From Haliotis rubra (taxonomy: Eukaryota), in NCBI RefSeq assembly GCF_003918875.1, contig NW_025766043.1, positions 1 through 64,000 on the forward strand: DNA of 64,000 nt. Reading direction: 5' to 3'. The notes beneath the pieces are model-generated. The model saw nothing but the letters and a program-made list of their open reading frames with translations. It was not told the origin of the DNA and did not search any database. The position numbers and the translations under genes were made by a program. This document shows positions 5,491 through 64,000 of the stretch, in pieces; within the stretch, counting starts at the first letter, position 1; the number at the start of each line of letters is the position of its first letter.

Positions 5491-5635
5491 AATATATACC
5501 CGTGATAAAAATTTGCCATTTTTAGGGTTCTGCTCAATTATCCTCATGAGTACGAGTGGACTAGAAAGGTAAGTTTCCATTGCTGGCATGTAGTTAAGGA
5601 ACATTGTGTCATTACAACATCTTGGGCGGGCTTAC

Positions 5636-7310: not shown

Positions 7311-7326
7311 CTTGTTGCTCAGATGA

Positions 7327-28492: not shown

Positions 28493-28650
28493 CTACAACA
28501 GGCCATCTTCCATAGTGCAGTCTGTGCGCATCTTCCCATCGCTGCACACACAAATATACCTGGCATCATCAGTCTCCATGGTGACACAGGTGGTACCCCG
28601 AGGACAAGGACTATTCCTGCAAGGGTTTGTGGGACGGGAACATCCTGGTT
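28493..28650 (-). CDS. FN3-array gene, terminal exon: EGF-like domain then stop
   Basis: Not in the ORF track in this frame. tcttcag acceptor, phase 1: EPGCSRPTNPCRNSPCPRGTTCVTMETDDARYICVCSDGKMRTDCTMEDGLL*. C-x4-C-x5-C-x10-C-x-C-x8-C spacing is EGF-like. Confidence 0.8.
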
Positions 28651-29256
28651 CTGAAGATACAGAGATATATTCCTACAGAACGTGGTCCTGCCAGTCACAC
28701 ACTGGGAAAATTCCAGGTCAGCTGTGCTTGTTTCCTAGAAATGTTATATTTGACAGCAATATTTGAGCTAAATGATGCCAGCAATATTTTAGCTATTGAT
28801 GAGCTATATGTTGCCGACCAAACAAACCTAGTACTGTATATTGAGAAATAGTCTGACAGGACCAAACAAATAAGATAAGAAGATAAACTTTATTGTCCTG
28901 CAAGGGAAATTTGTTTTGCATTCAAAGAGCCAATACAAGCATATAACAACAAATAATTTAAAGTATATATACACAATGCCAAGCTAATCAGAATATAATG
29001 TTGAATTATAACATAACCAAAGTTCGTGATATAATAATCACTTGTGCCTCATCATAGATTTCACTATTACAATTTTGGAGGAAGATTTAGAAGTTTTATA
29101 CTGTATGGACAAATGATTTTGAAGTTCTATTAGTTTTGTAATACATGATTTTGAAACGGCGGCCAGAAGGCAGAAGTTCATAACATTCATTTAAAAAGTG
29201 TGATGGATCCAATTGATTTCATTTCAGAAATGTAGGCCATCCGGTCCATAATTCAC

Positions 29257-29348
29257 CAGTCTAAGTAAACTTAGTCTCAGTACTATTCGTTACACTCCTC
29301 AGTATAGTAGGGTAACAAATAATACTGAGGCTAAGTTTACTTAGACTG
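29257..29348. mobile_element. 92-bp palindromic MITE with 9-bp TSD (Mutator-like)
   Basis: TIR cagtctaagtaaacttag...ctaagtttacttagactg; ataattcac at 29248-29256 and 29349-29357. Confidence 0.85.
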
Positions 29349-29628
29349 ATAATTCACATACATAGTCCTTTAATATACTTGACAGAGTACCTCATTATAT
29401 AAATTATGACATGTGACAATATTTGATAGATTTACCAACAACATTTAAATATGCTTACATGATACATTTAAATCAAATACAATTGTTTTCAATCCAGTTT
29501 TGTCTTAATTTAAAACTGCAAAATATGAAAGCTCCTAACTGCGGCCAGAAGGCAGAAGTTCATAACATTCATTTAAAAAGTGTGATGGATCCAATTGAAT
29601 GGCCAGAGCTTTCTTCTTAACTTTTGAC

Positions 29629-29897
29629 CACGGCTCGATTTAAGAGATGTTGACCTACTTGCACCGGGTGCAACCTAAGATAAAAACCTAGTTGCACCAG
29701 CCAAATTCTAATCGCACTGCTTCTATTGCAATATGTAATGAAAGAAATATGCTATTGAACTATTTAGATGTTTTATTCACAAGTTTACCCACTCACAAAT
29801 TGACCTGCACCTGGTGCAAATTAGACTAATAACTAGGTTGCACTTTGTAATATTTGCTAGCACCAGTGCAAGTAACAAAGCACTAAATCAAGCCCTG
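29629..29897. mobile_element. hAT-like MITE inserted in the LINE ORF
   Basis: TIR cacggctcgattta / taaatcaagccctg; flanks share tttgac; internal tgcacc(a/t)g repeats. The LINE reading frame resumes across it (QYES|KVKKKALAIQLDP). Confidence 0.7.
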
Positions 29898-30866
29898 TTT
29901 GACTCATACTGAAAAGGTAGAGGTTCGAAATTGAAGCCACAAATTTTGCTTGAGATGTTTACAATTTTGTCAAGTTTGTTTTTCTGTGTAAGAGGAAGAT
30001 TGCCATACCAGGCATGAAAGCAGAAAGTTAAAATACTATTAATGAATGTTTGGTAGAATAATTTTAAGATATTAGTGTCTACATAAAATGATCGCAATTT
30101 TCACAGAAAGAAAAGCCTCTGTTGTGCTTTCCTATATACAGGATGCGAATTTGATTTCCATGAAAGTTTATTATCAATGATAGTACCCAGATATTTATAC
30201 TCTTCTACTGTTTCTACTTCCTGTCCATCAATACAAACAGGTTTCAGTTTATTTTTTCCACTTCGGAAGTCAATTATAATTTCCTTTGGGTTTTTTATGT
30301 TCAGGGAGAGGTAATTGTCTTTGCACCATGAAGTAAACGCATCAATATTTTTCCTATACTCTAACTCTGATTGACAAATAAACCCAACCAAAACGGCATC
30401 ATCAGCAAATTTGAAATTCAGACAGGTGGATAAATGAGATATACAGTCATTTGTATAGAGTGTGAAGAGGACAGGGGACAGGACACAGCCTTGAGGAGCA
30501 CCAGTACTCGCAAGATTAACGTCAGTCACCAAGGCTGATCTATTGATCATCAAATCAGCTCCTACGACAACCTATGTCCCTGGGGAACCATTCTAACCCA
30601 TAATACACATGGCGGCAGTATGCTTGTTGGTCATCACAGCTGACTGACGGAGGACATGGCTGCTTTCATGTCATCACATACTGAAGGCATACAGAGTGAC
30701 ATGCACACGTGTGCACACTTGTCTGCAGGCTTGATACTGCTAGCCGACAGAGACAGCACATAGCATGCTATGATGGATACCCCATATCTGTACCCACTCT
30801 TAGCTGACCAGACATAGTTTGATTCCCTTTTGTGCAGAGTTCCATGCAGGATTACAAGTATGACAT

Positions 30867-30960
30867 ACCGTATATGACCGTCTATAAGCCGAATTTTGAG
30901 GACCAAAAAAAGCCGTCTGTAGAAGGGGGTCGTCTTATCCATGAGTTACACTTTCGTCAA
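30867..30960. mobile_element. Possible pogo/Tc1-mariner terminal fragment
   Basis: ta|ccgtatatgaccgtctataagccg...ggtcgtcttat resembles CCGTA-type termini; no partner end found. Confidence 0.35.
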
Positions 30961-31341
30961 ACTTTTTTCCAGGGGTAAGAAAACAACATCGTATCACTCC
31001 GCGTGAACAAACAACAGAAGACGACTTTGTCAGTAGAGACGTCAAATTTGCAATTAAACATCACTAGACAAGATTAATTACCATTTAAGTTACAAGTTGT
31101 TTTTGCTGGGCATTGTTTTATTTGCAGGGATTAAGATTACCGTGCGTATTTGTCTCGTACACAAAGCCGGAAATAGCAATCAGCTGTGCACACGTTTCCC
31201 GGCGAACAAGTTCAAACATGCACAATAATATAACGGGATGAATTCTATTGATTGAATACTATTATTTAACCCAAAGAAATATATCCTAGCATTGTGTAAT
31301 AGTTTTTATGTAAAAACTATATAATCAACACTAAGGTTATA

Positions 31342-33239: not shown

Positions 33240-33467
33240 TTATACGGACCATCATGAACGTGGTAAGCACGTGACATGGAACGAGGCGGTAATGTCATTT
33301 GGTATGAGGCCACCTGGGATTGCTAAAGTCATACACAGAAACACACAAAGACACAGACAGAATCACAGACAGACAGATGCATGCACAAACACACATACAT
33401 TTTACATAATGTAAATTTCTCTCTGAATATAACAGTACATATTCTTAACATGACGTAGCTGGCTCAC

Positions 33468-33674
33468 CTGTGCATCCTGTTTCAGAGACAGTGTACTTGA
33501 CGACCTTTGACATCTGACCAAATCCCTTCCTGTTTCGTGCCTGCACCTTGATGTAGTATCGTGTGTCCGGGGTCAGGTCCTTGATGACGACGGACAGACG
33601 ATCCCCCCCAACCCCCTCCATCACCCAGTCTTGCGTCTCTGCATCCTCTGTCGCTGTGTAGTACACCAGGTACC
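33468..33674 (-). CDS. FN3-array gene exon: second half of DCC/neogenin FN6-like domain (copy 3)
   Basis: GYLVYYTATEDAETQDWVMEGVGGDRLSVVIKDLTPDTRYYIKVQARNRKGFGQMS; AG/GT, 207 nt, phase 1/1. Confidence 0.9.
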
Positions 33675-34035
33675 CTGGAGCAACAGTTGCCATGGTAACT
33701 CAACATGGTAACAAAAGGGCATCATATAAAACCCTAAAAATAACTGCAGCTGCAGTTTCCATGGATGCAGATTACATAGACAATGGAATATTATGTTGAA
33801 CACCTGGTGTCCTCTAGCATCACAGTTGCCATGGTGATATAGCTTGATGCAGGGTCATCCAACAGATGACATTCTTATCTTGTCGTGTTGTTAACAGGGT
33901 TAAGATTTTCGGTCATGTGGACAAGGTGTCCAACCTTGGATCTGGAGGCCTGTGGTTCGAATTCCATCACTAGACTCAGTTATAAACACTTACAGTTTAA
34001 GGAATAGTGTATAACTTGTGGTACAGTTGACTTAC

Positions 34036-34146
34036 CTGTAATTAAACCATTAGTCTTGGCTGGTGGCTGCCAGGTGACGATGGCAGTGCCATAGTTGCTG
34101 CCTGAGACTGCTGTCACGGTAACGTCCTCCGGTGGACCCCCAGGTG
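34036..34146 (-). CDS. FN3-array gene exon: first half of FN6-like domain (copy 3)
   Basis: APGGPPEDVTVTAVSGSNYGTAIVTWQPPAKTNGLIT; 111 nt, AG/GT. Confidence 0.88.
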
Positions 34147-34736
34147 CTACAACAGCCGTTCAGTATGTAAACATTGTACTGTGACATTATTACCCACATG
34201 TCATGTGATGGTACCATCTGATTGGAAATTGGACAGGTAAAATTACTCGTGAAAAATATTTTAAAAAAACCCATTCTTCTTTTGTGTAGTATATACACAC
34301 GTTCAACACACGGACAGCCTACAAAATGTGTCTGTAAGTCAAATCCCTTTAATAAAACGTTCATCACTACAATTGCATACAAATTGCTCTATGATCTTTG
34401 TTAGTCTGATGGAAAAGTCATATATGTGAAAAGTTAAGGACACTATAAAGATTTATTATTTTTTTTGCAATAATTTAACTTAAAATCACACCATTTACAT
34501 AACTGTGTTAAATATGTTTTAGTAAGTGATTGAAATTATGCTTTAAAGAAGGAATTCCAATAATTGTTTTTAGATTTGCATGAAGAATTCAGGATTCAAC
34601 AAAGTTAGATTTCTACTTTGCATTTGAAATTCAGGGGATGTCGACAAACTCAAGGATGGACATTTGAATCTGCATACTCACAATACCTGCTGCAAATATA
34701 TATACCGTAAATACTGGAAATATATGCCATAACTAC

Positions 34737-35073
34737 CTGCTTCTTTAGTCTTGACTGCAAGTGTCATGCTCCATGGACTGTGCTCGCCATACTGAACCGA
34801 CATGACTGACATCTCATACTCCGTGTTGGCCTCGAGGTCCATGATCACAACGAACGGGTCATGAACAGATAGGTTCTTAAAGCGGGAGTCCAGAGAAGGT
34901 TTTACACTCTTGTACCGGACAATGTACTCAACGTCTTCATGTGAGTGTCCTTTCTTGTGAGTGTCTTTCCAGGTGAGAAGTGCTGATTCAGCAGTAATCT
35001 TGCGGGCCTTCAGACCTACTGGGGGTAACTCGTTGTACGAAGCTCTCGTCTCCCGGTGAGCAGATTACATCCC
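34737..35073 (-). CDS. FN3-array gene exon: DCC/neogenin FN5-like domain (copy 2), one frameshift
   Basis: PPVGLKARKITAESALLTWKD...YIVRYKS...DLEANTEYEMSVMSVQYGEHSPWSMTLAVKTKEA; 337 nt, indel probably at or near the G5 run at 35021-35025. Confidence 0.85.
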
Positions 35074-35602
35074 CTATAAAAGACAGTTGGATAAAACCTG
35101 TATGAAGATCAGGGTCAGGTGATTTAGCTTGCTGGATCATGCAAGTCATCATATGCCATACATCTATGCCCATGATGTCAGTCTCTAGATTACCTTGTCT
35201 AAAGTGAATCTCAAGTGACACCTACTTCCCTCACTTCATGACACAACCCTGTATGGAGTTTAAATGCACACGATCCAGGACCCTGAACATGAATTATTAA
35301 AGGGGGCTCATACAGTTGTGTATTTGTTTCTTCGCTCAATCACAAATGAAACATGAAAAAAATTATGAATACTATTGAATATATTGAAAATATTTTTAAA
35401 ATGAGATGATTGACCTTCCATCCACTGTATTAAAGATATAATGTCTGGCAGTATACAATGAACGTTTGAGACAATTCCTAACTTATGTGGGAAAATAGAT
35501 ACTTGTAGCACTGTATCAGGAAATATATGCTGCAGACTACGATTAGTGTCAAGCAATAGACTACAGTTAGTTCATAATCACAGCAGAGTTGGTGTGAAAT
35601 AC

Positions 35603-35800
35603 CTGTGCCAGATGTTCTGACCATGGATGAGCGAGATAGAGGTCCGTACCCCTCCTCATTTCGTGCTTGTATCTTGAAGAAGTACTTGGTGCAGGGAGTG
35701 AGGTCAGTGATGGTGGAGGTCAGAGTGTCGCCCAGCACGGCCTCCAACACCCATTCCCGCTCCGGCTTGGTATCATCCGTGGAGTAGTAGATCAGGTAGC
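35603..35800 (-). CDS. FN3-array gene exon: second half of FN6-like domain (copy 2)
   Basis: GYLIYYSTDDTKPEREWVLEAVLGDTLTSTITDLTPCTKYFFKIQARNEEGYGPLS; 198 nt, AG/GT. Confidence 0.9.
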
Positions 35801-35824
35801 CTACAATGGAGGTATGTTGTGTGA

Positions 35825-36905
35825 GATAACCACAACCATCTCTCTGATAACACCACAACCATCTCTCTGAAAATGGCCGGAATCATTTCTCTGACAACAC
35901 AAAAACCATCTCTCTGATAACACCACAACCATCGCTCTGAAAATGCCGAAATCATTTCTCTGACAACACAAAAAACATCTCTCTGATAACACCACAACCA
36001 TCGCTCTGACAACACAAAAACCATCGCTCTGACAATGCCACAACCATCGCTCTGAAAATGCCAGAATCATTTCTCTGACAACACAAACACCATCCCTCTG
36101 ATAACACCACAACCATCGCTCTGACAACACCACAACCATCTCTCTGAAAATGCCAGAATCATTTCTCTGACAACACAAACACCATCCCTCTGACAAGACA
36201 ACAACCATCTCTCTGACAACTCTCTGACAACACCACAACCATCTCTCTGACAACACAACAACCATCTCTCTGACAACTCTCTGACAACACCACAACCATC
36301 GCTCTGACAACACCACAACCATCGCTCTGAAAATACCGGAATCATTTCTCTGACAACACCACAACCATCTCTCTGATAACACCACAACCATCGCTCTGAC
36401 AACTCTCTGACAACACCACAACCATCTCTCTGACAAGACAACAACCATCTCTCTGACAACTCTCTGACAACACCACAACCATCGCTCTGACCACAACCAT
36501 CTCTATGACAACACCACAACCATCGCTCTGACAACACCACAACCATCTCTCTGACAACACCACAACTATCTCTCTGACAACCCCACAACCATCTCTCTGA
36601 TTACAACACAACCATCTCTCTGATAACACTACAACCATCACTCTAACAACACCACAACCATCGATCTGAACATGCCGGAATCATTTCTCTGACAACACAA
36701 AAACCATCCCTCTGATAACACAACAACCATCTCTCTGACAACACCACAACCATCTCTCTGACAACACCACAGCCATATCTCTGACAACACCACAACCATC
36801 TCTCTGACAACACTACAACCATCTCTCTGACAACACTACAACCATCTCTCTGACAACACTACAACCATCTCTCTGACAACACCACAACCATCTCTCTGAC
36901 AAAAC
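35825..36905. repeat. 23-bp minisatellite with higher-order variants
   Basis: Unit ctgacaacaccacaaccatctct, interleaved with aaaatgccagaatcattt variants. Confidence 0.92.
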
Positions 36906-37328
36906 TATAAGACACAGCTCTGACAATACTGGAATATGTTGGCCTTACAAAAAGAGATTACAGACATTCACAGGGGTTGTTTCCCTTCTTATCACCAGGA
37001 TCTGCTGCTCAAGACTTTAAATCCCTGGTTTGCTATACCGGTGTTTGTTGCATTCTCAACAGTAGTACACTTCAGTGTCCTGTATCACTTTGCTTTTCTC
37101 ACACAAACATCATATCATACCTGACGCACCTGCAGTACCCACAAAAGCACCATCCTAGCAATCATATCTGAACAGCTGAAACTTTATGAAGCAACTCTAC
37201 TGCCTGACAAATAGAGTGATAACTTGTGGAGTTACACTGTGTTTCCTTAACAACTTATTTCACTGCTGCAATGATTCTGGTAATACTGATATGGATGGAC
37301 TTGCACCACCCTTTGTTACTATAATTAC

Positions 37329-37436
37329 CTGTAATGACGCCATTAGGAATGGCTGGAGGTTGCCAGTTGATCAGAGCAGTGTCACCTTTGTCATCTGCTA
37401 CTGTCACGGTGATGTCTGCTGGTGCAGTACCTGGAG
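37329..37436 (-). CDS. FN3-array gene exon: first half of FN6-like domain (copy 2)
   Basis: APGTAPADITVTVADDKGDTALINWQPPAIPNGVIT; 108 nt, AG/GT. Confidence 0.88.
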
Positions 37437-37755
37437 CTGCGGACCAAACAACAACTTGATTAATCCAGCACTGTACCTAGAGGTGCGGACCAAACAACAA
37501 CTTGATTAATCCAGCACTGTACCTAGAGGTGCGGACCAAACAACAACTTGATTAATCCAGCACTGTACCTAGAGGTGGGGACCAAACAACAACTTGATTA
37601 ATCCAGCACTGTACCTAGAGCTGCGGACCAAACAACAACTTGATTAATCCAGCACTGTACCTAGAGGTGCGGACCAAACAACAACTTGATTAATCCAGCA
37701 CTGTACCTAGAGGTGCGGACCAAACAACAACTTGATTAATCCAGCACTGTACCTG
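37437..37755. repeat. 46-bp minisatellite, 7 copies, overlapping a splice acceptor
   Basis: ggaccaaacaacaacttgattaatccagcactgtacctagaggtgc at 37441, 37487, 37533 ... 37717. Confidence 0.95.
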
Positions 37756-37778
37756 GATGTAACATTTAGTCCCCACTG

Positions 37779-37935
37779 AGGTAGCCTAGTGGTTAAAGCG
37801 TTCGCTCATTACACCAAAGACCCGGGTTCGAATCCCCACATAGGCACAATGTGTGAAGCCCATTTCTGGTATTCCCCGCCGTGATACTGCTGGAATATTG
37901 CTAAAGGCGGTGTACTACTAAACTCACTCACTCAC
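37779..37935 (+). mobile_element. tRNA-derived SINE family A
   Basis: Box A/B and (ACTC)n tail. Confidence 0.88.
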
Positions 37936-38024
37936 TGACAATGAACATGAAATGTTATTACTGGAGCTTCCTGGAAAAATATAGAAAGCCTTTCATGTAC
38001 GGACCAAGAACTGTTAAACATTAC

Positions 38025-38222
38025 CTGCTGCCGAGGTGGTGAAAGCAACAACATTAGAGAATGGTCCATAACCCTTCCTGTTCCGAGCCTGCACCTTGAA
38101 GTAATTCGTCTGCTCTGGCTTCACACTGTTCAGGCGGGTCGACAGATCTTCACCTTGCACCTGCATGACTGTCCAATCTCTGTTGTCCCATGTCTTGTTA
38201 GTGGCGTAGAGAATCGTGTAGC
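38025..38222 (-). CDS. FN3-array gene exon: second half of FN6-like domain (copy 1)
   Basis: GYTILYATNKTWDNRDWTVMQVQGEDLSTRLNSVKPEQTNYFKVQARNRKGYGPFSNVVAFTT; 198 nt, AG/GT. Confidence 0.9.
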
Positions 38223-38650
38223 CTGAGTGTGTAAACATTTTGGGTCTTACATCACATGACGATGTATTTTCTGACCAGTAATTTGCCCAGATATGATCAA
38301 TGTCTTATATATCTAGAATATCTGAACAAAATTTCAACACATACCACATATCAACATCCAGCTCTTCAGAAAAGAAGAGGTCTGTCATGCGATCAGAGGT
38401 TTTACATACAAGGGCTATATGGATGCAAACAGTGTTCAATAAATTTGTGTAACCATGGTAACATGGATTAAAGAACTTAAGTACTCCATCTGTAAACTCT
38501 GGCTGATCATCTCTCTTTTTCATGTATAATTATTGGATTATGTTGCCATGGCTACATACATGAAAGCTGCAACAAAGGCATAAATATATGTCTACACCGT
38601 TTTTGTAAACCCATTCAAACAAAGATACTATATGATGCAGACGGACGTAC

Positions 38651-38752
38651 CCGTGATGACTCCATTAGCCTGTGTTGGGGGCTGCCAATTGATGGCAATG
38701 GAGTCCTGTGTGTCGCTGAGAACAGTCAGGTCCGTTGGTGGCGTGGCAGGTG
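38651..38752 (-). CDS. FN3-array gene exon: first half of FN6-like domain (copy 1)
   Basis: APATPPTDLTVLSDTQDSIAINWQPPTQANGVIT; 102 nt, AG/GT. Confidence 0.88.
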
Positions 38753-38951
38753 CTATAAGAATTGAATTTTCATCCAAAACAAAATCTCCCAAGAGCTATC
38801 ACTACAATAATTGCATCAAAATGCTTGCAGACAAGTCACCTCATTGGTTACCATGACATCACAATCAAATGACATCACTAATCTTTCTTCCACTAAAGCT
38901 GGTAAGCACAACTTTCTATACTCTTGACACAGATTTACTGTTTGCAAACTA

Positions 38952-39289
38952 CAGCTTGTTCAGCTTAACCTGAGCTACTCTACATATGACTGGGAGGTCA
39001 AATGGCACAAACAGCAGATCGAGTTAACTTCATTAAATAGGGGAGCAGAGAATGTTATTAATGTTGCATTTGTGCGAAGCATGCATACATGGATTTGTTA
39101 CAGAACCCGGAAAACAACACTTTTTTAAAGAAAGCTGACGATTTCTCGTCACTGAGATGTCAAACGGCGACCTGTTCAGACATGTTGACAATCAACTGAC
39201 AAATGTGCACCCTTCACAATAATAGACCCAACCAGTTGTGATACACAATGCATTAGTATTCACTTGATCAAGTCAAGCTGAACAAGCTG
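38952..39289. mobile_element. Tc1/mariner-like MITE
   Basis: TIR cagcttgttcagctt / aagctgaacaagctg flanked by TA. Interrupts a dispersed repeat whose uninterrupted copy is at ~25075-25220. Confidence 0.75.
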
Positions 39290-39437
39290 TAATATGGTTG
39301 CATGAATGACTTTGGATGATAAAAAGAATCGGATTTGGGTATATTGATTTATAAAATATCAACATTTCTCAAGTTCACAGTTGATAAATACAACAACACT
39401 TCAGTACAATACTCTCGGTAACAACTGTGTTTCCAGC

Positions 39438-39514
39438 CCATTTCTGGTGTCCCCTGCCGTGATATTGCTGGAATATTGCTAAAAGCGGCATAAAACCATG
39501 CTCACTCACTCACT
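39438..39514 (+). mobile_element. 5'-truncated SINE family A
   Basis: 3' half plus tail; TSD ctgtgtttccagc / ctgtgttcccagc. Confidence 0.8.
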
Positions 39515-39686
39515 CTGTGTTCCCAGCAGATAGAGTTATACATAGTTATTTCATGTCAGGGATTTATGTAGAATATTTGACGTCTAGTCTGTCATAAATG
39601 TTTGTGACAATGCCAAAATGGAATAGCAACATTGCCCCTAATACTATTATCCATGTGAAAACAAATGTCATGATTCTTTAGGGGTG

Positions 39687-39747
39687 ACCCACCGTGATAT
39701 TGCTGTAATATTGCTAAAAGCAGCATAAAACCATTCTCACTCACTCA
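39687..39747 (+). mobile_element. 5'-truncated SINE family A
   Basis: 3' end plus tail; 11-bp TSD ctttaggggtg at 39676 and 39748. Confidence 0.8.
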
Positions 39748-39967
39748 CTTTAGGGGTGGCTTCCATTTCCTTTAGAAGGGGCATTTACGCTTAGGTTAAC
39801 ATTACTGCATTAAAGGTTACGGGGAATATAACTTTAAAATAACTACCCCTTTCAATAAAATAATTGTATTTTTACCCATTACAATTGCCACTGTCAGATT
39901 GGAATCCTGAGAATACTCTGCCACTGCCTTGTATGTGTGTCTCTGTTTCAGTACTTAAAATATGCTA

Positions 39968-40203
39968 CCCGTGATGGTCCAGGTTAGAATATTGGCCTTC
40001 AGTAATCCATGCTTGTCGTAAGAGGCGACTAACGAGATCGGGTGGTCAGGCTCGCTGACTTGGTTGACACATGTCATCGGTTCCCAATTGCGCAGATCGA
40101 TGCTCATGCTGGGTTGTCTGGTCCAGACTCGATTATTTACAGACCGCCGCCATAAAGCTGGAATATTGCTGAGTGCGGCGTAAAACTAAACTCACTCACT
40201 CAC
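39968..40203 (+). mobile_element. SINE family B (V-domain-like core, no tRNA head visible)
   Basis: ccatgcttgtcgtaagaggcgactaac core; same 3' tail as family A; TSD-like acttaaaatatg / acttaatatatg. Confidence 0.85.
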
Positions 40204-40452
40204 TTAATATATGTCACAGGTATATACTTCTGTTAGAGAAGGCTTCATTCTCTTTACACGGTTTTCACAGTAGCCAGAATTTATACACAATGGACTTGAT
40301 TTATTATTTTCGCTGGTGTTTATAGATGTACATTGGCATTTATCTCTACCGTCAACATAACTAACTTTAAACAAAATATATTATATTTCCTGATTGTAAC
40401 TTCATAACTAACAAAACATTTTGTAAATGTGGCTAAGTGAGTTCCACCATAC

Positions 40453-40762
40453 CTGACTCGTGGGTCAAGATCAGAGATGACATGCTCCATGTTGAGTTTT
40501 CCCTTCCGTCCGTAACATGCACCGATACTTCGTATTCTGTGAAGGGCTTGAGGTTGTGTATCTGTACGCTGGTGTGAGAGGTGGCAACATACTGGTACAC
40601 TTCATGCTTGTGACGGTACCTAACCATGTACAAGTAGTTGTCAGGAAGCTCTACCCCGGCCTTCTGGTTCCCATCAGTCCACGCATGCGATGATGGAGGA
40701 TTTAGGACTGAAGCTGCCCTGTATCCCGACTGGTGGCGTGAGTGCGCTGTTCCGACTCCACT
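40453..40762 (-). CDS. FN3-array gene exon: DCC/neogenin FN5-like domain (copy 1), frameshifted
   Basis: LTPPVGIQ...(fs)WTDGNQKAGVELPDNYLYMVRYR...NLKPFTEYEVSVHVTDGRENSTWSMSSLILTHES; 310 nt, AG/GT. Confidence 0.85.
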
Positions 40763-41193
40763 CTATAATGAACAACCTCACAGTAACATATTGTAACATA
40801 ATGTTGGCAAATATATAGTATATGATGGGTGAGTCTATAATACTATTTTGTTTAATTAATATTTCAATGCTGAAATATGTTACAACATAGATCCTCACCC
40901 AAGGTAGTGAAGGACCAATGTCAATAATGTATAGTATGAGCGTAAAAAAAGACTTCAAGGCTTTTTTTTATAAACTTATAACACTAAATACAAAAACACT
41001 CATTCACACCACAAACACAACTAATAAAAGAACAGTCAATAATAACAACAACAATTTATACAATGCTGCAATGCATCCATAAGGACAACATTAATGAACT
41101 TAGTCACTGTGCACTTGATATTCATTCTCAGCTCCCTGGGGATCATACAACCCAAGTGGCCATTCAGGCACCAGTTACATTGTTCATGGGTGA

Positions 41194-41354
41194 GTGAGTG
41201 AGTTCAGTTTTACGCCGCTTTTTGCAATATTTCAGCAATATCACGGCGGGGTACACCAGAAATGGGCTTACACATTGTGCCCATGTGGGGAATCGAACCC
41301 GGACCTTCAGCGTGACGAGCGAACGCTTTAACCACTAGGCTACCCCACCGCCCC
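41194..41354 (-). mobile_element. tRNA-derived SINE family A, full length
   Basis: 13-bp TSD tgttcatgggtga at 41181 and 41355. Confidence 0.92.
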
Positions 41355-41807
41355 TGTTCATGGGTGAACAGAGGTCAGTTTTAAACAAAGTGAGGTAGAC
41401 ACCACATGAGCTAATTGTGCTTCAGGGTTAGGTTGCATCAGTTGCTAAGTTTCTAATACATTAAACCACAAATACAGTCACAACAAACTGTCGTATTGGT
41501 CCTGGACACTTGCTATATAATTTAGTTGAAACATGCATAACAAACTATGGTTATAAACATAGTAAAATTAGTGATCCTACAGTTAGAGGCCCAGGATGTG
41601 ATCCTGTTGAGTTCATTTTGACCTTAGTTTACTGTCTTTCATTCACATAACTTTTGCCTGGTCCAGACATAGAGGCAGGCTGCTGCCATACAGCTGTAAT
41701 ATTGCTGACAGAGGCATTAAACAACAAACAAACCATGCAGAAAATCAAGAAAACAAGAAGCAAGATGGTCTATATAATAGATAATGTCAGTTCTTCAAGA
41801 AACCCAC

Positions 41808-41897
41808 TTTTGAGTGTCTTGACTGCATCATAAAGAGGCTGCCCCACTCCAATCTTGTTGAAGCCGACAAGTTTCACCACATACTCTGTGTTTGGCT
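41808..41897 (-). CDS. FN3-array gene exon: end of DCC/neogenin FN4-like domain
   Basis: EPNTEYVVKLVGFNKIGVGQPLYDAVKTLK; 90 nt, AG/GT. Confidence 0.88.
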
Positions 41898-42429
41898 CTG
41901 TGGAGGACAAAGATGGATGACATCAAAGGTCTGTCTGACTACAGTTCTAACAGGAGGGATGACTGATATTCATGAAGACATAGTAGACACCACAAGCATT
42001 TCAACACTATGATTATTATGTTGAAGTGAGCGTATGTTCTTTACTGGCATTCATGTTTACCAGTTTGATCAGAATTCTGTATGCATATAAGAACAATATT
42101 GCAGAGATTATTGACGCAAAGTTCAGTTGACCAGAATACAGAACATCAAGTGTAATCACATCATCACGCACATCACAAGGAACATTTTTCCTTTACATTG
42201 GGTGATCTCGAGGTACAATTTTTATTCTGTTTAAGTGTAGATTTCTACTTGGTATGTTTTGCTAAATATAGGGCCTCTTTAGAAAGACTTAAAATCACTG
42301 GCAATATTAGGGCCTTTTCAAAGCTAAAATTAATTCAAGTTCTTTTGCATAAAATGTCCAAATAACTGTCTTTTCAAACCCGTGTGAACCCTGTGGATGA
42401 ATGAGATTGGTAACACAGCAGACACTCAC

Positions 42430-42632
42430 CTAGGTTGATACTACGGTATAAGACATCTGATGCTTGTCCACCACTGTGCTGTGGGTGTCTGGGATGCCCT
42501 TCCGTAGCTGAGGATGTAGCCGTCCGCGAGGTCAGCTGGGAGGAGAGAAGTGGGGCCAGTCAATCACCACGCTGTTGCTACTTGGCCTCAGACGTAAATG
42601 AGTAGGTGGGGCCGGAGCACTGTAGACCCTGT
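42430..42632 (-). CDS. FN3-array gene exon: start of FN4-like domain, several indels
   Basis: APAPPTHLRLRPSSNSVVIDW...ADGYILSYG..GIPDTHSTVVDKHQMSYTV; ttttcag acceptor, gtgagt donor. Confidence 0.8.
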
Positions 42633-43159
42633 CTGAAAAGGGCATGAAAACTTAAAATAAACCTACAGTAAATATCACTCCATAGTTTTAAATTGTATGA
42701 AGTAACTTTTTCAGTGTTCATAATCAAGGTGGTACTGAACTCTGTTATGTTTCATTGCTGTAGTATTTTAATTTAAAACATGATAACTCTTTAATATTTA
42801 AGTTTACGACAAAGACCTCTTGACTTACAAGCTTAATTTCAAATGCTGTATACGATTAATGATATGTTTACAGTATTTGATGCACTACATGCAAATACCA
42901 CTTGAATCACAAATGCCATTTATGTGCATTATAGAGAGCTTAAATGGTTTTCCAATACTTCTTAAAAACAGCAGCTATCTCTGCCTGCATGTTTACTAGA
43001 CATGAGGCAGGTTGGAACATCTCGTCATACAGTCCACTAGAGTACAGTCACCATCACCTGCCGTGGTCTCTGTTTTATTCAGAATCTACTGAACACTGTC
43101 GTTAGAGAGGCCAAATGACAACGATGTATAATGGCGTCATGTTACTGCTGTCAACATAC

Positions 43160-43311
43160 TGTGTGTCCTGATGGTGTCAGACGGAGGACTGGCCTGGCTG
43201 ATGCCGATTTCGTTTCTTGGCTGGGACCTGGAACATGTGCGATGTTCCTGGCTGCAGGTTCTGTACAGTGTAGGAGTTCTTTGTGATATCCTTGGATGCT
43301 GTTACCCAATC
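43160..43311 (-). CDS. FN3-array gene exon: second half of Robo-FN1-like domain, one frameshift
   Basis: DWVTASKDITKNSYTVQNLQPGTSHMFQV-(fs ggg 43223-43225)-QPRNEIGISQASPPSDTIRTH; phase 0/1. Confidence 0.85.
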
Positions 43312-43580
43312 CTAAACAGTCAAAATGGGGCTAAAAATCCCTCAAAGCTACAACCATGAAACATATTACAAAATCAATAACATACACAAATGAACAAATT
43401 TTACCTCAAATCTTTTGTAATATTTTTATGGGAGGGTGTAAGAAGTGATGCATGTGAACAAAATCTGTAGGACTCAATTCTTACAACTTCATTTAAACAC
43501 ACTGCAGAGGTATCTGTAATTCATCATTGGTTTCTATTCAGCAGGTAGAGAGAGTCTGGAAAACACACAGTGTGAGGCTC

Positions 43581-46218
43581 CACACAAACAGTCAGTCTCT
43601 TCAAGGATTACACAGGATCAGCCATCTAAAGGTACCACAACTGACACACCACACAAACAGTCAGTCTCTTCAAGGATTACACAGGATCAGTCATCTAAAG
43701 GTACCTGGCACTGACACACACACAAACAGTAATTCTGTCAACAGTCAGTCTCTTCAAGGATTACACAGGATCAGTCATCTAAAGGTACCACAACTGACAC
43801 ACCACACAAACAGTCAGTCTCTTCAAGGATTACACAGGATCAGTCATCTAAAGGTACCACAACTGACACACCACACAAACAGTCAGTCTCTTCAAGGATT
43901 ACACAGGATCAGTCATCTAAAGGTACCACAACTGACACACCACACAAACAGCCAGTCTCTTCAAGGATTACACAGGATCAGTCATCTAAAGGTACCACAA
44001 CTGACACACCACACAAACAGTCAGTCTCTTCAAGGATTACACAGGATCAGCCCATCTAAAGGTACCACAACTGACACACCACACAAACAGTCAGTCTCTT
44101 CAAGGATTACACAGGATCAGTCATCTAAAGGTACCAAAACTGACACACCACACACAAACAGTCAGTCTCTTCAAGGATTACACAGGATCAGTCATCTAAA
44201 GGTACCACAACTGACACACCACACACAAACAGTCAGTCTCTTCAAGGATTACACAGGATCAGCCATCTAAAGGTACCACAACTGACACACCACACAAACA
44301 GTCAGTCTCTTCAAGGATTACACAGGATCAGCCATCTAAAGGTACCACAACTGACACACCACACAAACAGTCAGTCTCTTCAAGGATTACACAGGATCAG
44401 CCATCTAAAGGTACCACAACTGACACACCACACAAACAGTCAGTCTCTTCAAGGATTACACAGGATCAGCCATCTAAAGGTACCACAACTGACACACCAC
44501 ACAAACAGTCAGTCTCTTCAAGGATTACACAGGATCAGCCATCTAAAGGTACCACAACTGACACACCCTACAAACAGCCAGTCTCTTCAAGGATTACACA
44601 GGATCAGTCATCTAAAGGTACCACAACTGACACACCCTACAAACAGTCAGTCTCTGCAAGGACTACACAGGATCAGCCATCTAAAGGTACCACAACTGAC
44701 ACACCACACAAACAGTCAGTCTCTTCAAGGATTACACAGGATCAGTCACCTAAAGGTACCACAACTGACACACCACACAAACAGTCAGTCTCTTCAAGGA
44801 TTACACAGGATCAGCCATCTAAAGGTACCACAACTGACACACCACACAAACAGTCAGTCTCTTCAAGGATTACACAGGATCAGCCATCTAAAGGTACCAC
44901 AACTGACACACCCTACAAACAGCCAGTCTCTTCAAGGATTACACAGGATCAGCCATCTAAAGGTACCACAACTGACACACCACACAAACAGTCAGTCTCT
45001 TCAAGGATTACACAGGATCAGTCATCTAAAGGTACCACAACTGACACACCCTACAAACAGTCAGTCTCTTCAAGGATTACACAGGATCAGCCATCTAAAG
45101 GTACCACAACTGACACACCACACAAACAGTCAGTCTCTTCAAGGATTACACAGGATCAGCCATCTAAAGGTACCAACAACTGACACATTCTACAAACAGT
45201 CAGTCTCTTCAAGGATTACACAGGATCAGCCATCTAAAGGTACCACAACTGGACACACCACACAAACAGTCAGTCTCTGCAAGGATTACACAGGATCAGC
45301 CATCTAAAGGTACCACAACTGACACACCCTACAAACAGCCAGTCTCTTCAAGGATTACACAGGATCAGCCATCTAAAGGTACCACAACTGACACACCACA
45401 CAAACAGTCAGTCTCTTCAAGGATTACACAGGATCAGCCATCTAAAGGTACCACAACTGACACACCACACAAACAGCCAGTCTCTTCAAGGATTACACAG
45501 GATCAGCCATCTAAAGGTACCACAACTGACACACCACACAAACAGTCAGTCTCTTCAAGGATCATTACAGGATCAGCCATCTAAAGGTACCACAACTAAC
45601 ACACTACAAACAGCCAGTCTCTTCAAGGATTACACAGGATCAGCCATCTAAAGGTACCACAACTGACACACCACACAAACAGTCAGTCTCTTCAAGGATT
45701 ACACAGGATCAGCCATCTAAAGGTACCACAACTGACATACCACAAACAGTCAGTCTCTTCAAGGATTACACAGCATCAGTCATCTAAAGGTACCACAACT
45801 GACACACCACACAAACAGTCAGTCTCTTCAAGGATTACACAGGATCAGTCATCTAAAGGTACCACAACTGACACACCACACAAACAGTCAGTCTCTTCAA
45901 GGATTACACAGCATCAGTCATCTAAAGGTACCACAACTGACACACCACACAAACAGTCAGTCTCTTCAAGGATTACACAGCATCAGTCATCTAAAGGTAC
46001 CACAACTGACACACCACACAAACAGTCAGTCTCTTCAAGGATTACACAGGATCAGCCATCTAAAGGTAACCACAACTGACACACCACACAAACAGTCAGT
46101 CTCTTCAAGGATTACACAGGATCAGCCATCTAAAGGTACCACAACTGACACACCACACAGTCAGTCTCTTCAAGGATTACACAGGATCAGCTATCTAAAG
46201 GTACCACAACTGACATAC
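43581..46218. repeat. 69-bp intronic minisatellite, ~38 near-identical copies
   Basis: cacacaaacagtcagtctcttcaaggattacacaggatcagccatctaaaggtaccacaactgacacac; period 69. Confidence 0.97.
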
Positions 46219-46622
46219 CAGAAAGCTGTAATCATTAGGAGAGGTGTTACTATTCACTCACATATTCGATGAAATACACCATAAAACTTGGTAAATTTCA
46301 TTTTTTTTCAAAACAATTCTCATGCTCGCTCATGGATTTCATCAAAGCTGTAAAAATCTAACACCTGCTCCAGGCCCGGCTTCCTTTCCACAAGAGTCTG
46401 ATATGAACATGTGTCCATGAAACAACTGAAATAGCTTTCAGAGTTGCATCAAACTTGACTCCCTCACTCACCCTCCGTCAGCAATCCAATTAGATATGAC
46501 GATGTGTCAACTTTGTCAAGCAAGACTGACCACCTGATCCCATTAGTCATCTCTTACAACAAACATGGGTTGCAGACGGCCAATTCTAACCCCAATCTCC
46601 CCTGGCGACTGTATATACTCAC

Positions 46623-46789
46623 ATGTTTCTGTCCACTGATGCTGAAGTACTCAATGATGTAGCCAAGGAGTTTGTCCTGCTGTGCACGGGGTCCCGGCTG
46701 CCATGTCAGCTTCACGCTGGTGTCTGTGACGTCTGACTCCACCACCTGGGGCTGCGGCGCCTCGGGCAGCTTCAGGCTGAACACTGACT
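46623..46789 (-). CDS. FN3-array gene exon: first half of Robo-FN1-like domain (most 5' exon visible)
   Basis: SVFSLKLPEAPQPQVVESDVTDTSVKLTWQPGPRAQQDKLLGYIIEYFSISGQKH; ccacag acceptor (phase 1, so upstream exons exist), gtgagt donor. Confidence 0.88.
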
Positions 46790-47778: not shown

Positions 47779-47911
47779 ACCATGTATAGTGTAATAAAAC
47801 ACACTTTCGCCCTAAATTATTATAGTTAAAGTACAAGGACACTTGCGTCCGAGTGCTTTTAACGTTATAATAGTTTAGAGTGAAAGTGTGCTTTATAACA
47901 CTATACATGGT
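47779..47911. repeat. ~130-bp imperfect palindrome (fold-back/MITE-like)
   Basis: accatgtatagtgtaataaaacacactttcgccctaaattattata ... tataatagtttagagtgaaagtgtgctttataacactatacatggt. Confidence 0.85.
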
Positions 47912-48289
47912 ATTAAACTTGGCTATATTCTTACCTAAAATACCAAATTTAATACTTTCTAAGGATGATTACGATTAATTCAAGGCAGAAAGAGCAAGCA
48001 GCGGTGTCGGTGACCTAAATTAAGAATCCTGGCGACAGGGCTAACTGGCAAGCTATTTAACGCTTGTTCTATTGGTGTGTCTGCCCCTCACGTTCAAGAC
48101 CTAGCGTTACCAGAAAAACAAATGATAACGGTTTGATGGCCGGTTTTCGTTACGGTCGAAGAAATATCTTCTCTGAATTGGTTTGAGTACATCTGTCATT
48201 AACTTTGACCATATGGGACAATATGAGCGTGCGATTTCTACTACCAGCGGTAAGTTTAGATGAGTACATCCAGATGAAGCTGAGTAGTC

Positions 48290-63200: not shown

Positions 63201-64000
63201 AATTTCCTTGCGGAGACGATGAAGTTTGTCTTCGCGGTTCGGGCTTTCTGACCATTGCTACGGGTTGACGACATGTGGCTCAGTATTGGCACGACGTCGT
63301 TGGCTTTCAGATATTTAACGTCAGTATGACGTTTCAGGAGAACAACGGGTTTTCCCGGTCGACTGGCGAGGACCAGTTCGCAATGGGGTATGTCGAGACA
63401 GTGTTGGATCCCCTGAAACCGGGAACCAGTCGCTGATCTGGGGTGCCGCCTGCGGAAGACTGACGACCGAGGTACTGTTGGTGCGGCGATAATTGCGCTA
63501 ACGTTGTGTCAACCGCCGGTCAATGGTCGGACTGACTATTATTCGTTCCAGGCTGATGACCATCGGGGGTCTGATGAACTTGACTCTGCTGACCGGTTTG
63601 GCGGTCGGCAATGTTTGTTGTGTTTTCGTTAACGGTGAACTGTTTCAGGTGGTTGTCGAGCATTCACTGCAGGGGTGGCCTGATAAATTGATGAGAATCG
63701 TTGTTGTGTTCAGGCATGCCGACACCTGGCTCTCGATGATTGTAAATAACTTGTCGGTTTTGTGAAATGTTGAACAACCGTTTGCCAGAATAGTATGCGC
63801 GGAATGTTTCAACTGAAGTAACGACAGAGCTTAATGAGCAATGTGAAAAATCTTATTCGAATCGCTTTACCGAAGAGGCTTTTTGTGCGGTTCGAAGGCC
63901 TGCAATTTTTAAAGGCTGACGCATATTATGCATGGCGGGTGATCGTCCGTAGTGTTTGATGATGCGGCAACGACGCGATGCTGGTCGGGCATGGTCACGG
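48290..64000 (-). other. Corrupted inverted copy of ~27,900-48,250 (probable long-read fold-back artefact)
   Basis: Exact reverse-complement anchors in colinear order: 47955-47965/48482-48492, 47890-47910/48530-48550, 35782-35798/57678-57694, 31817-31847/60880-60910 (31/31), 29728-29749/62488-62509. Blurred mirrors of the 69-bp (~49,900-51,640), 46-bp (~56,165-56,460), 23-bp (~56,870-57,650) and 196-bp (~60,060-60,770) arrays. Confidence 0.93.

What the first reader, a model, noticed from the sequence alone, without database searches (positions are those of the whole stretch)
28493..46789. Mosaic Robo/DCC-like FN3 array ending in an EGF domain with no membrane anchor: candidate secreted guidance-cue decoy
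Seen: 13 exons with canonical splice sites and consistent phases give 7 FN3 domains, then an EGF-like domain and a stop, with no hydrophobic TM segment or cytoplasmic tail. From recalled family sequences, domain 1 resembles Robo FN1 (YIIEYFS...W...GISQASPPSDTIRT). Domains 2-7 resemble DCC/neogenin/Frazzled FN4 (LRLRP...GYILSYG..GIP...FNKIGVGQPLY), FN5 (PPVG...STWSM) and FN6 (WQPP..NG.ITGY...DW...GD.L...QARN.KG.GP.S), in the order FN4-FN5-FN6-FN6-FN5-FN6. Established: FN4-FN6 of DCC/neogenin form the netrin- and RGM-binding region, and the canonical receptors have one copy followed by a TM helix. Inference: an exon-shuffled, multivalent, secreted netrin/RGM- or matrix-binding protein rather than the neogenin orthologue. 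I do not know this architecture from any described family.
Basis: partly seen in the sequence, partly recalled or inferred. Interest (0 to 1): 0.8.

Follow-up and report, generated by a model that had tools for sequence, protein, structure and literature searches.

The report
Secreted midkine–neogenin FN3 mosaic gene
The window holds most of a real, snail-specific gene for a secreted protein that joins three midkine-like heparin-binding domains to re-duplicated copies of the ligand-binding FN3 domains of the neogenin/DCC receptor (plus one Robo-like FN3 and perhaps an EGF tail); relatives already sit in other gastropod genomes, mis-named "neogenin", and nobody has studied them.

Summary
In the window the frame is broken at least six times (E2, E3, E5, E10). 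A second, collinear copy of the locus (C2267, 96-98.5% identical) lacks those indels and carries three private ones. A mosaic of the two copies gives one open frame, so these look like assembly or haplotype errors, not a pseudogene.

- D1 groups with this genome's own Robo FN1 and shares its intron.
- D2-D7 are neogenin FN4-FN5-FN6-FN6-FN5-FN6.
- A canonical neogenin lies elsewhere (C702).
- No TM or P1-P3 exon follows.

On C2267 a signal-peptide exon and three PTN_MK_C (midkine/pleiotrophin) exons, all phase 1, lie 3.5-5.6 kb upstream. The window lacks them because its 48-64 kb part is a fold-back assembly artefact.

Relatives with the core layout (signal peptide, three MK_C, neogenin-type FN3 array, no TM) occur in Aplysia, Elysia, Plakobranchus, Batillaria and Littorina. 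One is a spliced transcript contig. None has the Robo-like domain or the EGF.

The EGF splice and any netrin/RGM "decoy" role are untested.

The parts
46623..46789 (-). E1: N-terminal half of D1 (Robo-FN1-like FN3). Phase-1 acceptor, phase-0 donor CAT|GTGAGT.
   Evidence: Best non-self match in the own genome is the Robo FN1 exon on C1002 (46% identity). The C2267 copy has one extra codon.
43160..43311 (-). E2: C-terminal half of D1. The window copy has a 1-nt insertion (A at 43215) that shifts the frame.
   Evidence: The intact C2267 copy best matches the Robo FN1 C-half (53% identity) and human ROBO2 FN1 in the PDB (6.7e-12).
42430..42632 (-). E3: N-terminal half of D2 (neogenin FN4 type). 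There are three frame shifts in the window copy.
   Evidence: (C2267 copy in one frame).
41808..41897 (-). E4: C-terminal half of D2 (FN4 type). Identical in both copies.
40453..40762 (-). E5: D3 (neogenin FN5 type) in a single exon. There is one frame shift in the window copy.
   Evidence: WGS contigs differ from the window at 40686-40712, where C2267 also differs.
38651..38752 (-). E6: N-terminal half of D4 (FN6 type), ending ...NGVITG.
38025..38222 (-). E7: C-terminal half of D4 (FN6 type).
37329..37436 (-). E8: N-terminal half of D5 (FN6 type). Intact here, frame-shifted in C2267.
35603..35800 (-). E9: C-terminal half of D5 (FN6 type).
   Evidence: D5 groups with Aplysia domain 8 and Batillaria domain 7 (97/87).
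34737..35073 (-). E10: linker plus D6 (second FN5-type domain). The window has one extra G at 35054; C2267 has a private 2-nt deletion further on.
   Evidence: (best PDB hits are neogenin/DCC FN5).
34036..34146 (-). E11: N-terminal half of D7 (FN6 type). Intact here, frame-shifted in a G5 run in C2267.
33468..33674 (-). E12: C-terminal half of D7 (FN6 type). Donor CAG|GTGAGC in phase 1. If the donor is not used, the frame stops 6 codons later at 33448.
   Evidence: (neogenin FN6, 5.6e-18).
28493..28650 (-). E13: putative last exon. Phase-1 acceptor, EGF-like domain, stop codon. Use in the transcript is unverified.
   Evidence: 98% identical copy in C2267; poly(A) signals at 28177 and 28130.
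47900..64000 (.). Not part of the gene. This is a fold-back (palindromic) stretch that replaces the true 5' flank. It is collinear with the reverse complement of 47.8 to 28.9 kb at 60-73% identity, with as many gaps as mismatches.
   Evidence: skew flip at 48 kb; homology to C2267 ends at 47872.

Best explanation
The window holds exons 5-17 of a roughly 970-residue secreted mosaic protein of a mollusc. The organism is most likely a gastropod.

The full gene can be read only on the second copy of the locus, C2267:1285.8-1310.5 kb. Its order is:
- a signal peptide
- three midkine/pleiotrophin C-type (PTN_MK_C, heparin-binding) domains
- one FN3 copied, intron included, from Robo FN1
- six FN3 derived from neogenin FN4-FN6, in the order 4-5-6-6-5-6
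- probably one EGF-like domain, then a stop

There are no Ig domains, no membrane anchor and no neogenin cytoplasmic motifs. Every module is a phase 1-1 exon set, the classic substrate of exon shuffling.

The gene is a divergent member of an uncharacterised gastropod family (signal peptide, three MK_C, an array of eight or nine neogenin-type FN3, no TM).

Shown here: the architecture, the origin of each domain, family membership, and the absence of a TM.

Inferred mechanism: the protein is secreted and held on heparan- or chondroitin-sulphate proteoglycans of matrix or cell surfaces by the basic MK_C domains. There it displays several copies of the FN5-FN6 unit, which in neogenin/DCC binds netrin, RGM and heparin. 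I put about 0.8 on 'secreted, glycosaminoglycan-tethered FN3 scaffold'. I put about 0.35 on the narrower claim that it captures or presents netrin/RGM-type ligands (decoy or co-factor).
For: Gene model. Indels are private to one copy or the other and several sit in short homopolymer runs (AAA at 43215, GGG at 35054, the G5 run in E11).

Domain identity: PDB hits, blastp against neogenins, and trees.

Exon structure: the FN4, FN5 and FN6 exon splits match those of the canonical gene on C702.

N-terminus: the signal-peptide exon and three MK_C exons are all phase 1. Pfam PTN_MK_C scores are 27.9, 27.5 and 56.8 bits against a cut-off of 25.3. PDB hits are midkine and pleiotrophin.

Family:
- P0183 is a 3922-nt Logan contig with a 1216-aa ORF, whereas the related Elysia chlorotica gene spans 21 kb. 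It must be spliced mRNA joining three MK_C to the FN3 array.
- Aplysia, Batillaria and Littorina models have the same layout.
- The Elysia locus has three MK_C exons directly upstream of its FN3 array.
- Our model aligns end to end with the Batillaria protein (residues 1-912 to 1-953, E 5e-88).
- D5 groups with family domains rather than with canonical FN6.

No TM in our model, nor in the four family members scanned (P0183, P0185, P0187, P0302), beyond the signal peptide. No P1-P3, TM or Ig exon nearby. Genes on the opposite strand at 21050-21439 and 12415-14055 bound the locus.
Against: There is no transcript evidence from this species. Only RAD-like and whole-genome runs were found.

Three junctions are therefore models: MK_C to E1, inclusion of D1, and E12 to E13.

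Neither copy of the locus is open throughout.

No relative has the Robo-like FN3 or an EGF, and no EGF exon lies downstream in Elysia.

Identity to family members is only 28-32%. Positional orthology of the FN3 copies is mostly unresolved.

No binding test of any kind was run.
Confidence: 0.8

Rival explanations
1. The protein ends without an EGF. E12 is the last coding exon, read through six codons to the TAA at 33448. The EGF-like exon at 28650-28493 is unused, or belongs to something else.
For: All relatives end straight after their last FN3 (...PKELL) and none has an EGF. No EGF exon lies downstream in the Elysia locus. The E12 donor could simply be inherited from the duplicated FN6 units, whose donors sit at the same place. 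E13 is below Pfam thresholds.
Against: The E12 donor is a near-perfect consensus (CAG|GTGAGC). E13 has a pyrimidine-rich acceptor in the required phase 1 and the full six-cysteine EGF spacing. ATTAAA and AATAAA follow the E13 stop by 316-363 nt, and none follows the 33448 stop within about 850 nt. No other EGF exon or gene that could own E13 was seen between 21.5 and 33.4 kb.
Confidence: 0.35
2. It is a secreted matrix or adhesion protein whose FN3 array no longer binds netrin or RGM. The neogenin-type domains serve only as spacers or as heparin-binding modules.
For: Identity to canonical FN4-6 is only 31-52%, and the FN5-type domains have the longest branches in the tree. The N-terminal MK_C domains, and the lysine-rich linkers in relatives, point to glycosaminoglycan binding as the dominant activity. 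Lineage-specific secreted multi-FN3 proteins are common in molluscs (my own knowledge).
Against: Only the FN4-FN6 types were kept and multiplied. From established structural work on netrin-DCC/neogenin and RGM-neogenin, these form the ligand-binding part of the receptors. The PDB entries hit are those complexes. FN1-3 types are absent.
Confidence: 0.45
3. There are two separate genes: a small secreted gene with three MK_C domains upstream, and a 5'-incomplete FN3 gene. The match in phase is a coincidence.
For: Read through its donor, the third MK_C exon reaches a stop after 8 codons. A stand-alone midkine-like protein is therefore possible. No transcript from this species is available.
Against: A spliced transcript contig (P0183) and four independent gene models in other gastropods carry MK_C and the FN3 array in one ORF. 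The same adjacency is seen in the Elysia locus. E1 needs an upstream phase-1 donor. The MK_C exon provides one 3.5 kb away, within the range of the gene's other introns. No other candidate was found in 45 kb.
Confidence: 0.12
4. It is a decaying pseudogene copy of neogenin exons, and the frameshifts are real.
For: There are at least six frame breaks in the window copy and three in C2267.
Against: No break is shared by the two copies, and several sit in short homopolymer runs (AAA in E2, GGG in E10, the G5 run in E11). There are no in-frame stop codons in the 972 codons of the mosaic model. The window's contig also carries a raw-read-like fold-back. Whole-genome contigs disagree with the window at E5 sites where C2267 also does. 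The family is conserved across gastropod orders.
Confidence: 0.05
5. The repeated FN5 and FN6 exons are an assembly duplication of one FN5-FN6 unit.
For: The contig is of poor quality.
Against: The repeated FN6-type exons are far from identical at protein level (E12 against E9 42%, against E7 39%). The same order is present on the independent contig C2267 and in other species.
Confidence: 0.02

Closest known systems
Uncharacterised gastropod proteins annotated 'neogenin [Aplysia californica]' (P0185), 'neogenin-like [Littorina saxatilis]' (P0302), hypothetical proteins of Batillaria attramentaria (P0187) and Elysia chlorotica (P0032), Elysia marginata (P0186), Plakobranchus (P0184), and the transcript contig P0183
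   Same: In the full-length models (P0183, P0185, P0187): signal peptide, three PTN_MK_C domains, then an FN3 array that begins FN4-FN5-FN6-FN6; no Ig, TM or cytoplasmic motifs. The alignment with P0187 is collinear (E 5e-88). P0032, P0184 and P0186 are 5'- or 3'-partial models of the same array; P0302 carries PF01091 plus fn3 and no TM but its sequence was not inspected here.
   Different: The relatives have 8-9 FN3 and long lysine/arginine-rich linkers, and they end ...PKELL. This gene has 6 neogenin-type FN3, short linkers, an extra Robo-FN1-like FN3 between MK_C and FN4, and a possible EGF tail. Identity is only 28-32%.
Neogenin / DCC / Frazzled netrin and RGM receptors
   Same: D2-D7 fall inside the FN4, FN5 and FN6 clades. 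They keep the exon splits of the canonical gene of the same genome on C702.
   Different: There are no Ig1-4, no FN1-3, no TM and no P1-P3. FN5 and FN6 are duplicated in tandem. The protein is secreted. The true orthologue lies elsewhere.
Midkine / pleiotrophin (Drosophila Miple) heparin-binding growth factors
   Same: Three domains pass the Pfam PTN_MK_C threshold. Their best PDB matches are midkine and pleiotrophin C-domains.
   Different: No PTN_MK_N domain was found. The C-domain is triplicated and fused to a 770-residue FN3 array, instead of forming a 13-kDa cytokine.
Roundabout (Robo) FN1
   Same: D1 is 46-53% identical to the FN1 of this genome's Robo gene on C1002 and shares its phase-0 intron.
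   Different: Only this one domain is Robo-like. There are no Robo Ig domains, FN2-3, TM or CC motifs.

Membership tests
DCC/neogenin/Frazzled receptors | Four N-terminal Ig domains | tested here: not met
   phmmer with neogenin Ig1-4 and Robo Ig5 found no Ig-like ORF in the window or in C2267:1250001-1350000. tblastn with 150 proteins gave nothing either.
DCC/neogenin/Frazzled receptors | Six FN3 domains in the order FN1 to FN6 | tested here: not met
   Only the FN4, FN5 and FN6 types are present, in the order 4-5-6-6-5-6. No other FN3 exon was found.
DCC/neogenin/Frazzled receptors | Transmembrane helix and cytoplasmic P1-P3 motifs | tested here: not met
   P1, P2 and P3 exons are found on C702, but none is found in the window or in the 40 kb downstream on C2267. 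No convincing TM ORF was found. There is no hydrophobic segment in the model beyond the signal peptide.
DCC/neogenin/Frazzled receptors | FN4-FN6 homology (ligand-binding region) | tested here: met
   E values are 1e-21 to 1e-33 against neogenin FN4 and FN6, and 1e-10 to 1e-17 against FN5. Clade support is 99-100 for FN4 and FN5 and 94-98 for FN6.
Gastropod MK_C + FN3-array family ('neogenin' of Aplysia etc.) | Signal peptide followed by three PTN_MK_C domains | tested here: met
   On C2267:1310498-1308413, the exons are phase-compatible and all three pass the Pfam cut-off. These exons lie outside the usable part of the window.
Gastropod MK_C + FN3-array family ('neogenin' of Aplysia etc.) | FN3 array beginning FN4-FN5-FN6-FN6, with no TM | tested here: met
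Gastropod MK_C + FN3-array family ('neogenin' of Aplysia etc.) | One transcript joining MK_C and FN3 exons in this species | not testable with these tools
   No RNA run was served. The join is shown only for a relative (P0183).
Gastropod MK_C + FN3-array family ('neogenin' of Aplysia etc.) | C-terminus ...PKELL directly after the last FN3 | tested here: not met
   The model ends in an EGF-like domain (...EDGLL). If the E12 donor is not used, it ends ...GEPATSC.
Robo receptors | Five Ig domains, three FN3, TM and CC motifs | tested here: not met
   Only D1 is Robo-like. The Robo gene itself is on C1002.
Midkine/pleiotrophin | PTN_MK_N plus PTN_MK_C in a small (about 13 kDa) protein | tested here: not met
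   Three C-type domains are present. No N-type domain was found among the cysteine-rich or lysine-rich ORFs listed for C2267:1304900-1312500. The ORF continues into the FN3 array.
EGF-like domain | Six-cysteine pattern C-x4-C-x5-C-x(8-11)-C-x-C-x8-C, and profile match | tested here: inconclusive
   The pattern is present. PDB phmmer gives DLK1 at 0.005 and Notch1 at 0.04. The Pfam EGF_Mua-3 score is 17.2 bits against a cut-off of 27.

The most novel reading that the evidence does not exclude
Gastropods have a dedicated extracellular regulator of netrin/RGM signalling. It would be a proteoglycan-tethered, multivalent trap or presenter, built by fusing midkine-type heparin-binding domains to multiplied copies of the ligand-binding FN5-FN6 unit of neogenin. 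In this lineage it was further remodelled by capture of a Robo FN1 and an EGF module.
Probability: 0.15. Interest if true: 0.75.

Novelty: new variant of a known kind. Interest (0 to 1): 0.45.

Why it matters
If the model holds, this is a clean, datable case of exon shuffling. Modules from three or four unrelated signalling proteins (midkine/pleiotrophin, Robo, neogenin, and perhaps an EGF protein) were joined through phase-1 introns into one secreted protein. Only the ligand-binding FN4-FN6 part of a guidance receptor was kept and multiplied.

The model gives a testable candidate for an extracellular modulator of netrin/RGM or proteoglycan signalling in molluscs.

It also flags a naming problem. 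Automatic pipelines call these proteins "neogenin", which will mislead orthology tables.

In practical terms, contig C1153 is an error-prone duplicate of part of C2267 with a fold-back artefact. It should not be used for gene models.

Tried and rejected
- RNA evidence. Two run searches (the 7.4-kb stretch 33400-40800, and exon E10 alone) found only small RAD-like runs holding the same fixed fraction of words, plus whole-genome runs. None is on record as RNA.
- Read laying. Whole-genome contigs laid on 37350-43340 confirm that the exons exist in independent data. They differ from the window at E5 sites. The indel table was truncated, so the individual exonic indels at 43215 and in E3 could not be read off.
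- TM or cytoplasmic exon. tblastn with the octopus neogenin tail and a hydropathy scan of minus-strand ORFs from 14 to 33.4 kb gave only microsatellite- or transposon-derived hydrophobic ORFs.
- The tblastn hit running from E12 down to 33328 is a (TG/TC)n-derived low-complexity ORF lying beyond a stop codon, not a TM exon.
- Big HMMER search with FN5b. The top of the list is bacterial multi-FN3 proteins, through summed scores. The useful hits were single-stretch neogenins and the Elysia protein.
- Close (vetigastropod) orthologue. A profile search seeded with the window's exons added only the Littorina protein.
- EGF or Robo-like exon in the Elysia locus: none found.
- Strict signal-peptide scan: empty. 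The relaxed scan found the real candidates.
That 'signal peptide' is the translated polypyrimidine tract of a phase-1 acceptor.
- Netrin-contact residue check. My recollection of a DCC FN5 methionine in the ...WSM motif could not be verified in the paper library, so it is not used.
- C1112 'FN5-like' hit: it is a generic FN3, not a family member.
- No complex prediction was sent. No netrin or RGM sequence of this genome was in hand.

Full report
**1. What is in the window**

The finding lies on the minus strand of an AT-rich animal sequence. All have AG/GT borders. There is one phase-0 intron inside the first FN3, and phase 1 at every other junction.

Pfam fn3 hits the exon translations. The last intron holds a reverse-transcriptase fragment at 30104-30571.

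In the window's own letters the frame is not open:
- E2 has one extra A at 43215.
- E3 changes frame three times.
- E5 changes frame once.
- E10 has GGG for GG at 35054.

**2. A second copy of the locus explains the frameshifts**

The window is G000:C1153:1-64000, in a genome of 1.38 Gb in 2855 contigs. A collinear copy lies on the 3.3-Mb contig C2267 at 1257463-1305996. It is 96-98.5% identical, with many small gaps.

Exon by exon, every window frameshift is absent from C2267. There, E1-E5 read in one frame. C2267 in turn has private shifts in E8, E10 and E11 where the window is intact. Several of the indels sit in short homopolymer runs: AAA in E2, GGG in E10 and the G5 run in E11.

Taking each exon from the copy in which it is intact gives 2336 nt. 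This is open from E1 to the stop in E13, 777 codons.

Whole-genome contigs from public runs cover the exons. They disagree with the window at E5 positions where C2267 also disagrees.

I read the indels as consensus errors or haplotype-private lesions, not as an old pseudogene. No lesion is shared, and there is no in-frame stop.

**3. The window's 5' flank is an artefact**

Homology to C2267 stops at 47872. At the same point GC and AT skew flip.

The stretch from 48.6 to 63.2 kb is collinear with the reverse complement of 47.8 to 28.9 kb. Identity is only 60-73%, and gaps are as frequent as mismatches, across introns and exons alike.

Uniform, indel-rich divergence of this kind is what a raw long read folded back on itself looks like. 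It is not what an old inverted duplication looks like. I therefore looked for the gene's 5' end on C2267.

**4. Origin of each FN3**

PDB sequence searches gave these results:
- E10 best matches neogenin/DCC FN5 (6e-9).
- E12 best matches neogenin/DCC FN6 (6e-18).
- The halves of D1 match ROBO2 FN1 among generic FN3 hits.

Against octopus, horseshoe-crab and other neogenins:
- D2 hits only FN4 strongly (about 1e-21 to 1e-24).
- D3 and D6 hit only FN5.
- D4, D5 and D7 hit FN6 (1e-27 to 1e-33).
- D1 has no preferred partner.

In maximum-likelihood trees of single domains:
- D1 pairs with this genome's Robo FN1 (100/99).
- D2 sits in the FN4 clade (99-100).
- D3 and D6 sit in the FN5 clade (100/99).
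- D4, D5 and D7 sit in the FN6 clade (94-98).

The trees hold only neogenin FN1-6, Robo FN1 and family domains, so D1's link to Robo rests also on the whole-genome scan. Both halves of D1 have their best non-self matches at C1002 (46% and 53% identity). C1002 is the Robo orthologue: its Ig5 matches ROBO2 Ig5 and its FN1 matches ROBO2 FN1. The phase-0 intron lies at the same place in both genes. D1 was therefore copied as genomic DNA.

The canonical neogenin (Ig1-4, FN1-6, P1, P2, P3) is on C702:723192-757245. It has the same exon splits: FN4 in two exons, FN5 in one, and FN6 split after ...ITG.

**5. No anchor**

- No P1-P3 exon lies in the window or in the 40 kb downstream on C2267.
- No further FN3 or Ig exon lies in 164 kb searched.
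- No credible TM ORF lies between 14 and 33.4 kb.
- Opposite-strand genes bound the locus: a HEAT-repeat ORF at 21050-21439 and an ankyrin-repeat ORF at 12415-14055.

**6.

E1 needs an upstream phase-1 donor. On C2267 the same strand carries four exons, each with phase-1 borders:
- a textbook signal-peptide exon at 1310498-1310399
- three exons at 1309707-1309555, 1309334-1309185 and 1308592-1308413

Each of the three passes the Pfam PTN_MK_C gathering score (27.9, 27.5 and 56.8 bits; cut-off 25.3). The third best matches midkine and pleiotrophin structures.

Joined to E1-E13, they give a 972-residue model. Its only hydrophobic segment is the signal peptide.

**7. It belongs to a family**

The FN5b search of 1.8 billion representatives returned an Elysia chlorotica hypothetical protein. 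Its domain order is FN4-5-6-6-5-6-5-6-6.

A search with that protein, and then with a profile, found further relatives:
- a 1216-aa ORF on a 3922-nt Logan contig (P0183)
- 'neogenin [Aplysia californica]'
- Elysia marginata and Plakobranchus models
- Batillaria attramentaria
- 'neogenin-like [Littorina saxatilis]'

The full-length models inspected (P0183, Aplysia, Batillaria) begin with a signal peptide and three PTN_MK_C domains. The Elysia marginata, Elysia chlorotica and Plakobranchus models are truncated at one end, and the Littorina sequence was not inspected, though it carries PF01091 and fn3. The four members scanned for hydrophobic segments (P0183, Aplysia, Batillaria, Littorina) have no TM beyond the signal peptide.

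The related Elysia chlorotica gene spans 21 kb, so the 3.9-kb contig P0183 must be spliced mRNA. This is transcript-level proof, in a relative, that MK_C and the FN3 array form one protein. The Elysia locus also has three MK_C exons right upstream of the array.

Our model aligns end to end with the Batillaria protein (E 5e-88, 28% identity). D5 groups with the penultimate FN6 of Aplysia and Batillaria (97/87), which argues for shared ancestry of the duplications. The other positional relations are unresolved.

No relative has a Robo-like FN3 or an EGF.

Two literature searches (midkine with FN3 and mollusc; PTN_MK_C) found no description of such proteins.

**8. The EGF end**

In favour:
- E13 has a good acceptor in phase 1 and the Notch-type cysteine spacing.
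- It gives weak DLK1 and Notch matches, and it has a copy in C2267.
- It is followed by poly(A) signals, which the alternative stop at 33448 lacks.

Against:
- No relative has an EGF.
- There is no RNA evidence.

I put about 0.6 on its use.

**9. How it probably works**

Shown: a secreted architecture, with basic midkine-type domains at the front and several FN5-FN6 units behind.

From established knowledge:
- MK/PTN C-domains bind heparan and chondroitin sulphate.
- FN4-FN6 of DCC/neogenin carry the netrin and RGM sites, and DCC FN5 binds heparin.

Inference: the protein is held on proteoglycans and offers multivalent FN5-FN6 surfaces. Whether these still bind netrin or RGM (as decoy, presenter or co-factor), or act only as matrix modules, is open. 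I give 0.35 to the first and 0.45 to the second.

**10. Verdict**

The claim of uniqueness does not hold, and the decoy idea remains a hypothesis.

The organism is a mollusc. The best canonical-neogenin matches are Octopus, Saccostrea and Tegillarca, and the family is known only from gastropods. The assembly statistics remind me of a published nanopore abalone assembly. That is recollection only and was not tested.

Noticed in passing
window 47900-64000: Fold-back. This stretch is the reverse complement of 47.8 to 28.9 kb at 60-73% identity, with gaps as frequent as mismatches and a flip of GC/AT skew. It is most likely a palindromic raw-read artefact in contig C1153.
   Followed up: yes
window 43580-46220: A 69-bp tandem repeat of 38 copies (92% matches) in the intron between E1 and E2. 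It is also present in the C2267 copy.
   Followed up: partly
window 35830-36940: A minisatellite in the E8-E9 intron. It gives long spurious Cys/Trp/Arg-rich ORFs and strong C over G skew. The C2267 copy is shorter.
   Followed up: no
window 30104-30571 (-): Reverse-transcriptase fragment (RVT_1, 1.4e-9) of a retroelement, inside the putative last intron.
   Followed up: no
window 37750-37950, 39350-39550, 39950-40350, 41150-41350: Very high-copy short interspersed elements. Summed contig depth is 1e6 to 2e7 in whole-genome runs, and there are many chimeric joints. Further copies with the same ORF motif (...FSNIPA...YHGG...) occur elsewhere in the window.
   Followed up: no
window 12415-14055 (+): Intronless 546-aa ORF with ankyrin repeats (Ank_2, 4.8e-11). 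It is a separate gene on the opposite strand.
   Followed up: partly
window 21050-21439 (+): 129-aa ORF with HEAT repeats (HEAT_2, 2.3e-6). It bounds the FN3 gene downstream.
   Followed up: partly
window 6555-7310 (-): 251-aa ATG-initiated ORF with no Pfam match.
   Followed up: no
G000:C702:723192-757245 (+), loci L025-L034: Canonical neogenin/DCC orthologue of this genome (Ig1-4, FN1-6, P1-P3). The Ig3 exon was not picked up clearly by tblastn.
   Followed up: partly
G000:C1002:144561-147707 (L037): Robo orthologue (Ig5 and FN1 exons), the apparent donor of D1.
   Followed up: partly
G000:C2253:302376-302582 (L008): Another FN6-like second-half exon, 32-35% identical to D4, D5, D7 and to canonical FN6. 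It may belong to a further DCC-subclass gene.
   Followed up: no
L048 (Elysia chlorotica RQTK01000005.1), 388-7428 (-): A hyaluronidase (Glyco_hydro_56) gene is the upstream neighbour of the Elysia family member. The annotated Elysia protein starts inside the lysine-rich linker and misses the signal peptide and two MK_C exons at 9135-9272 and 9810-9938.
   Followed up: partly
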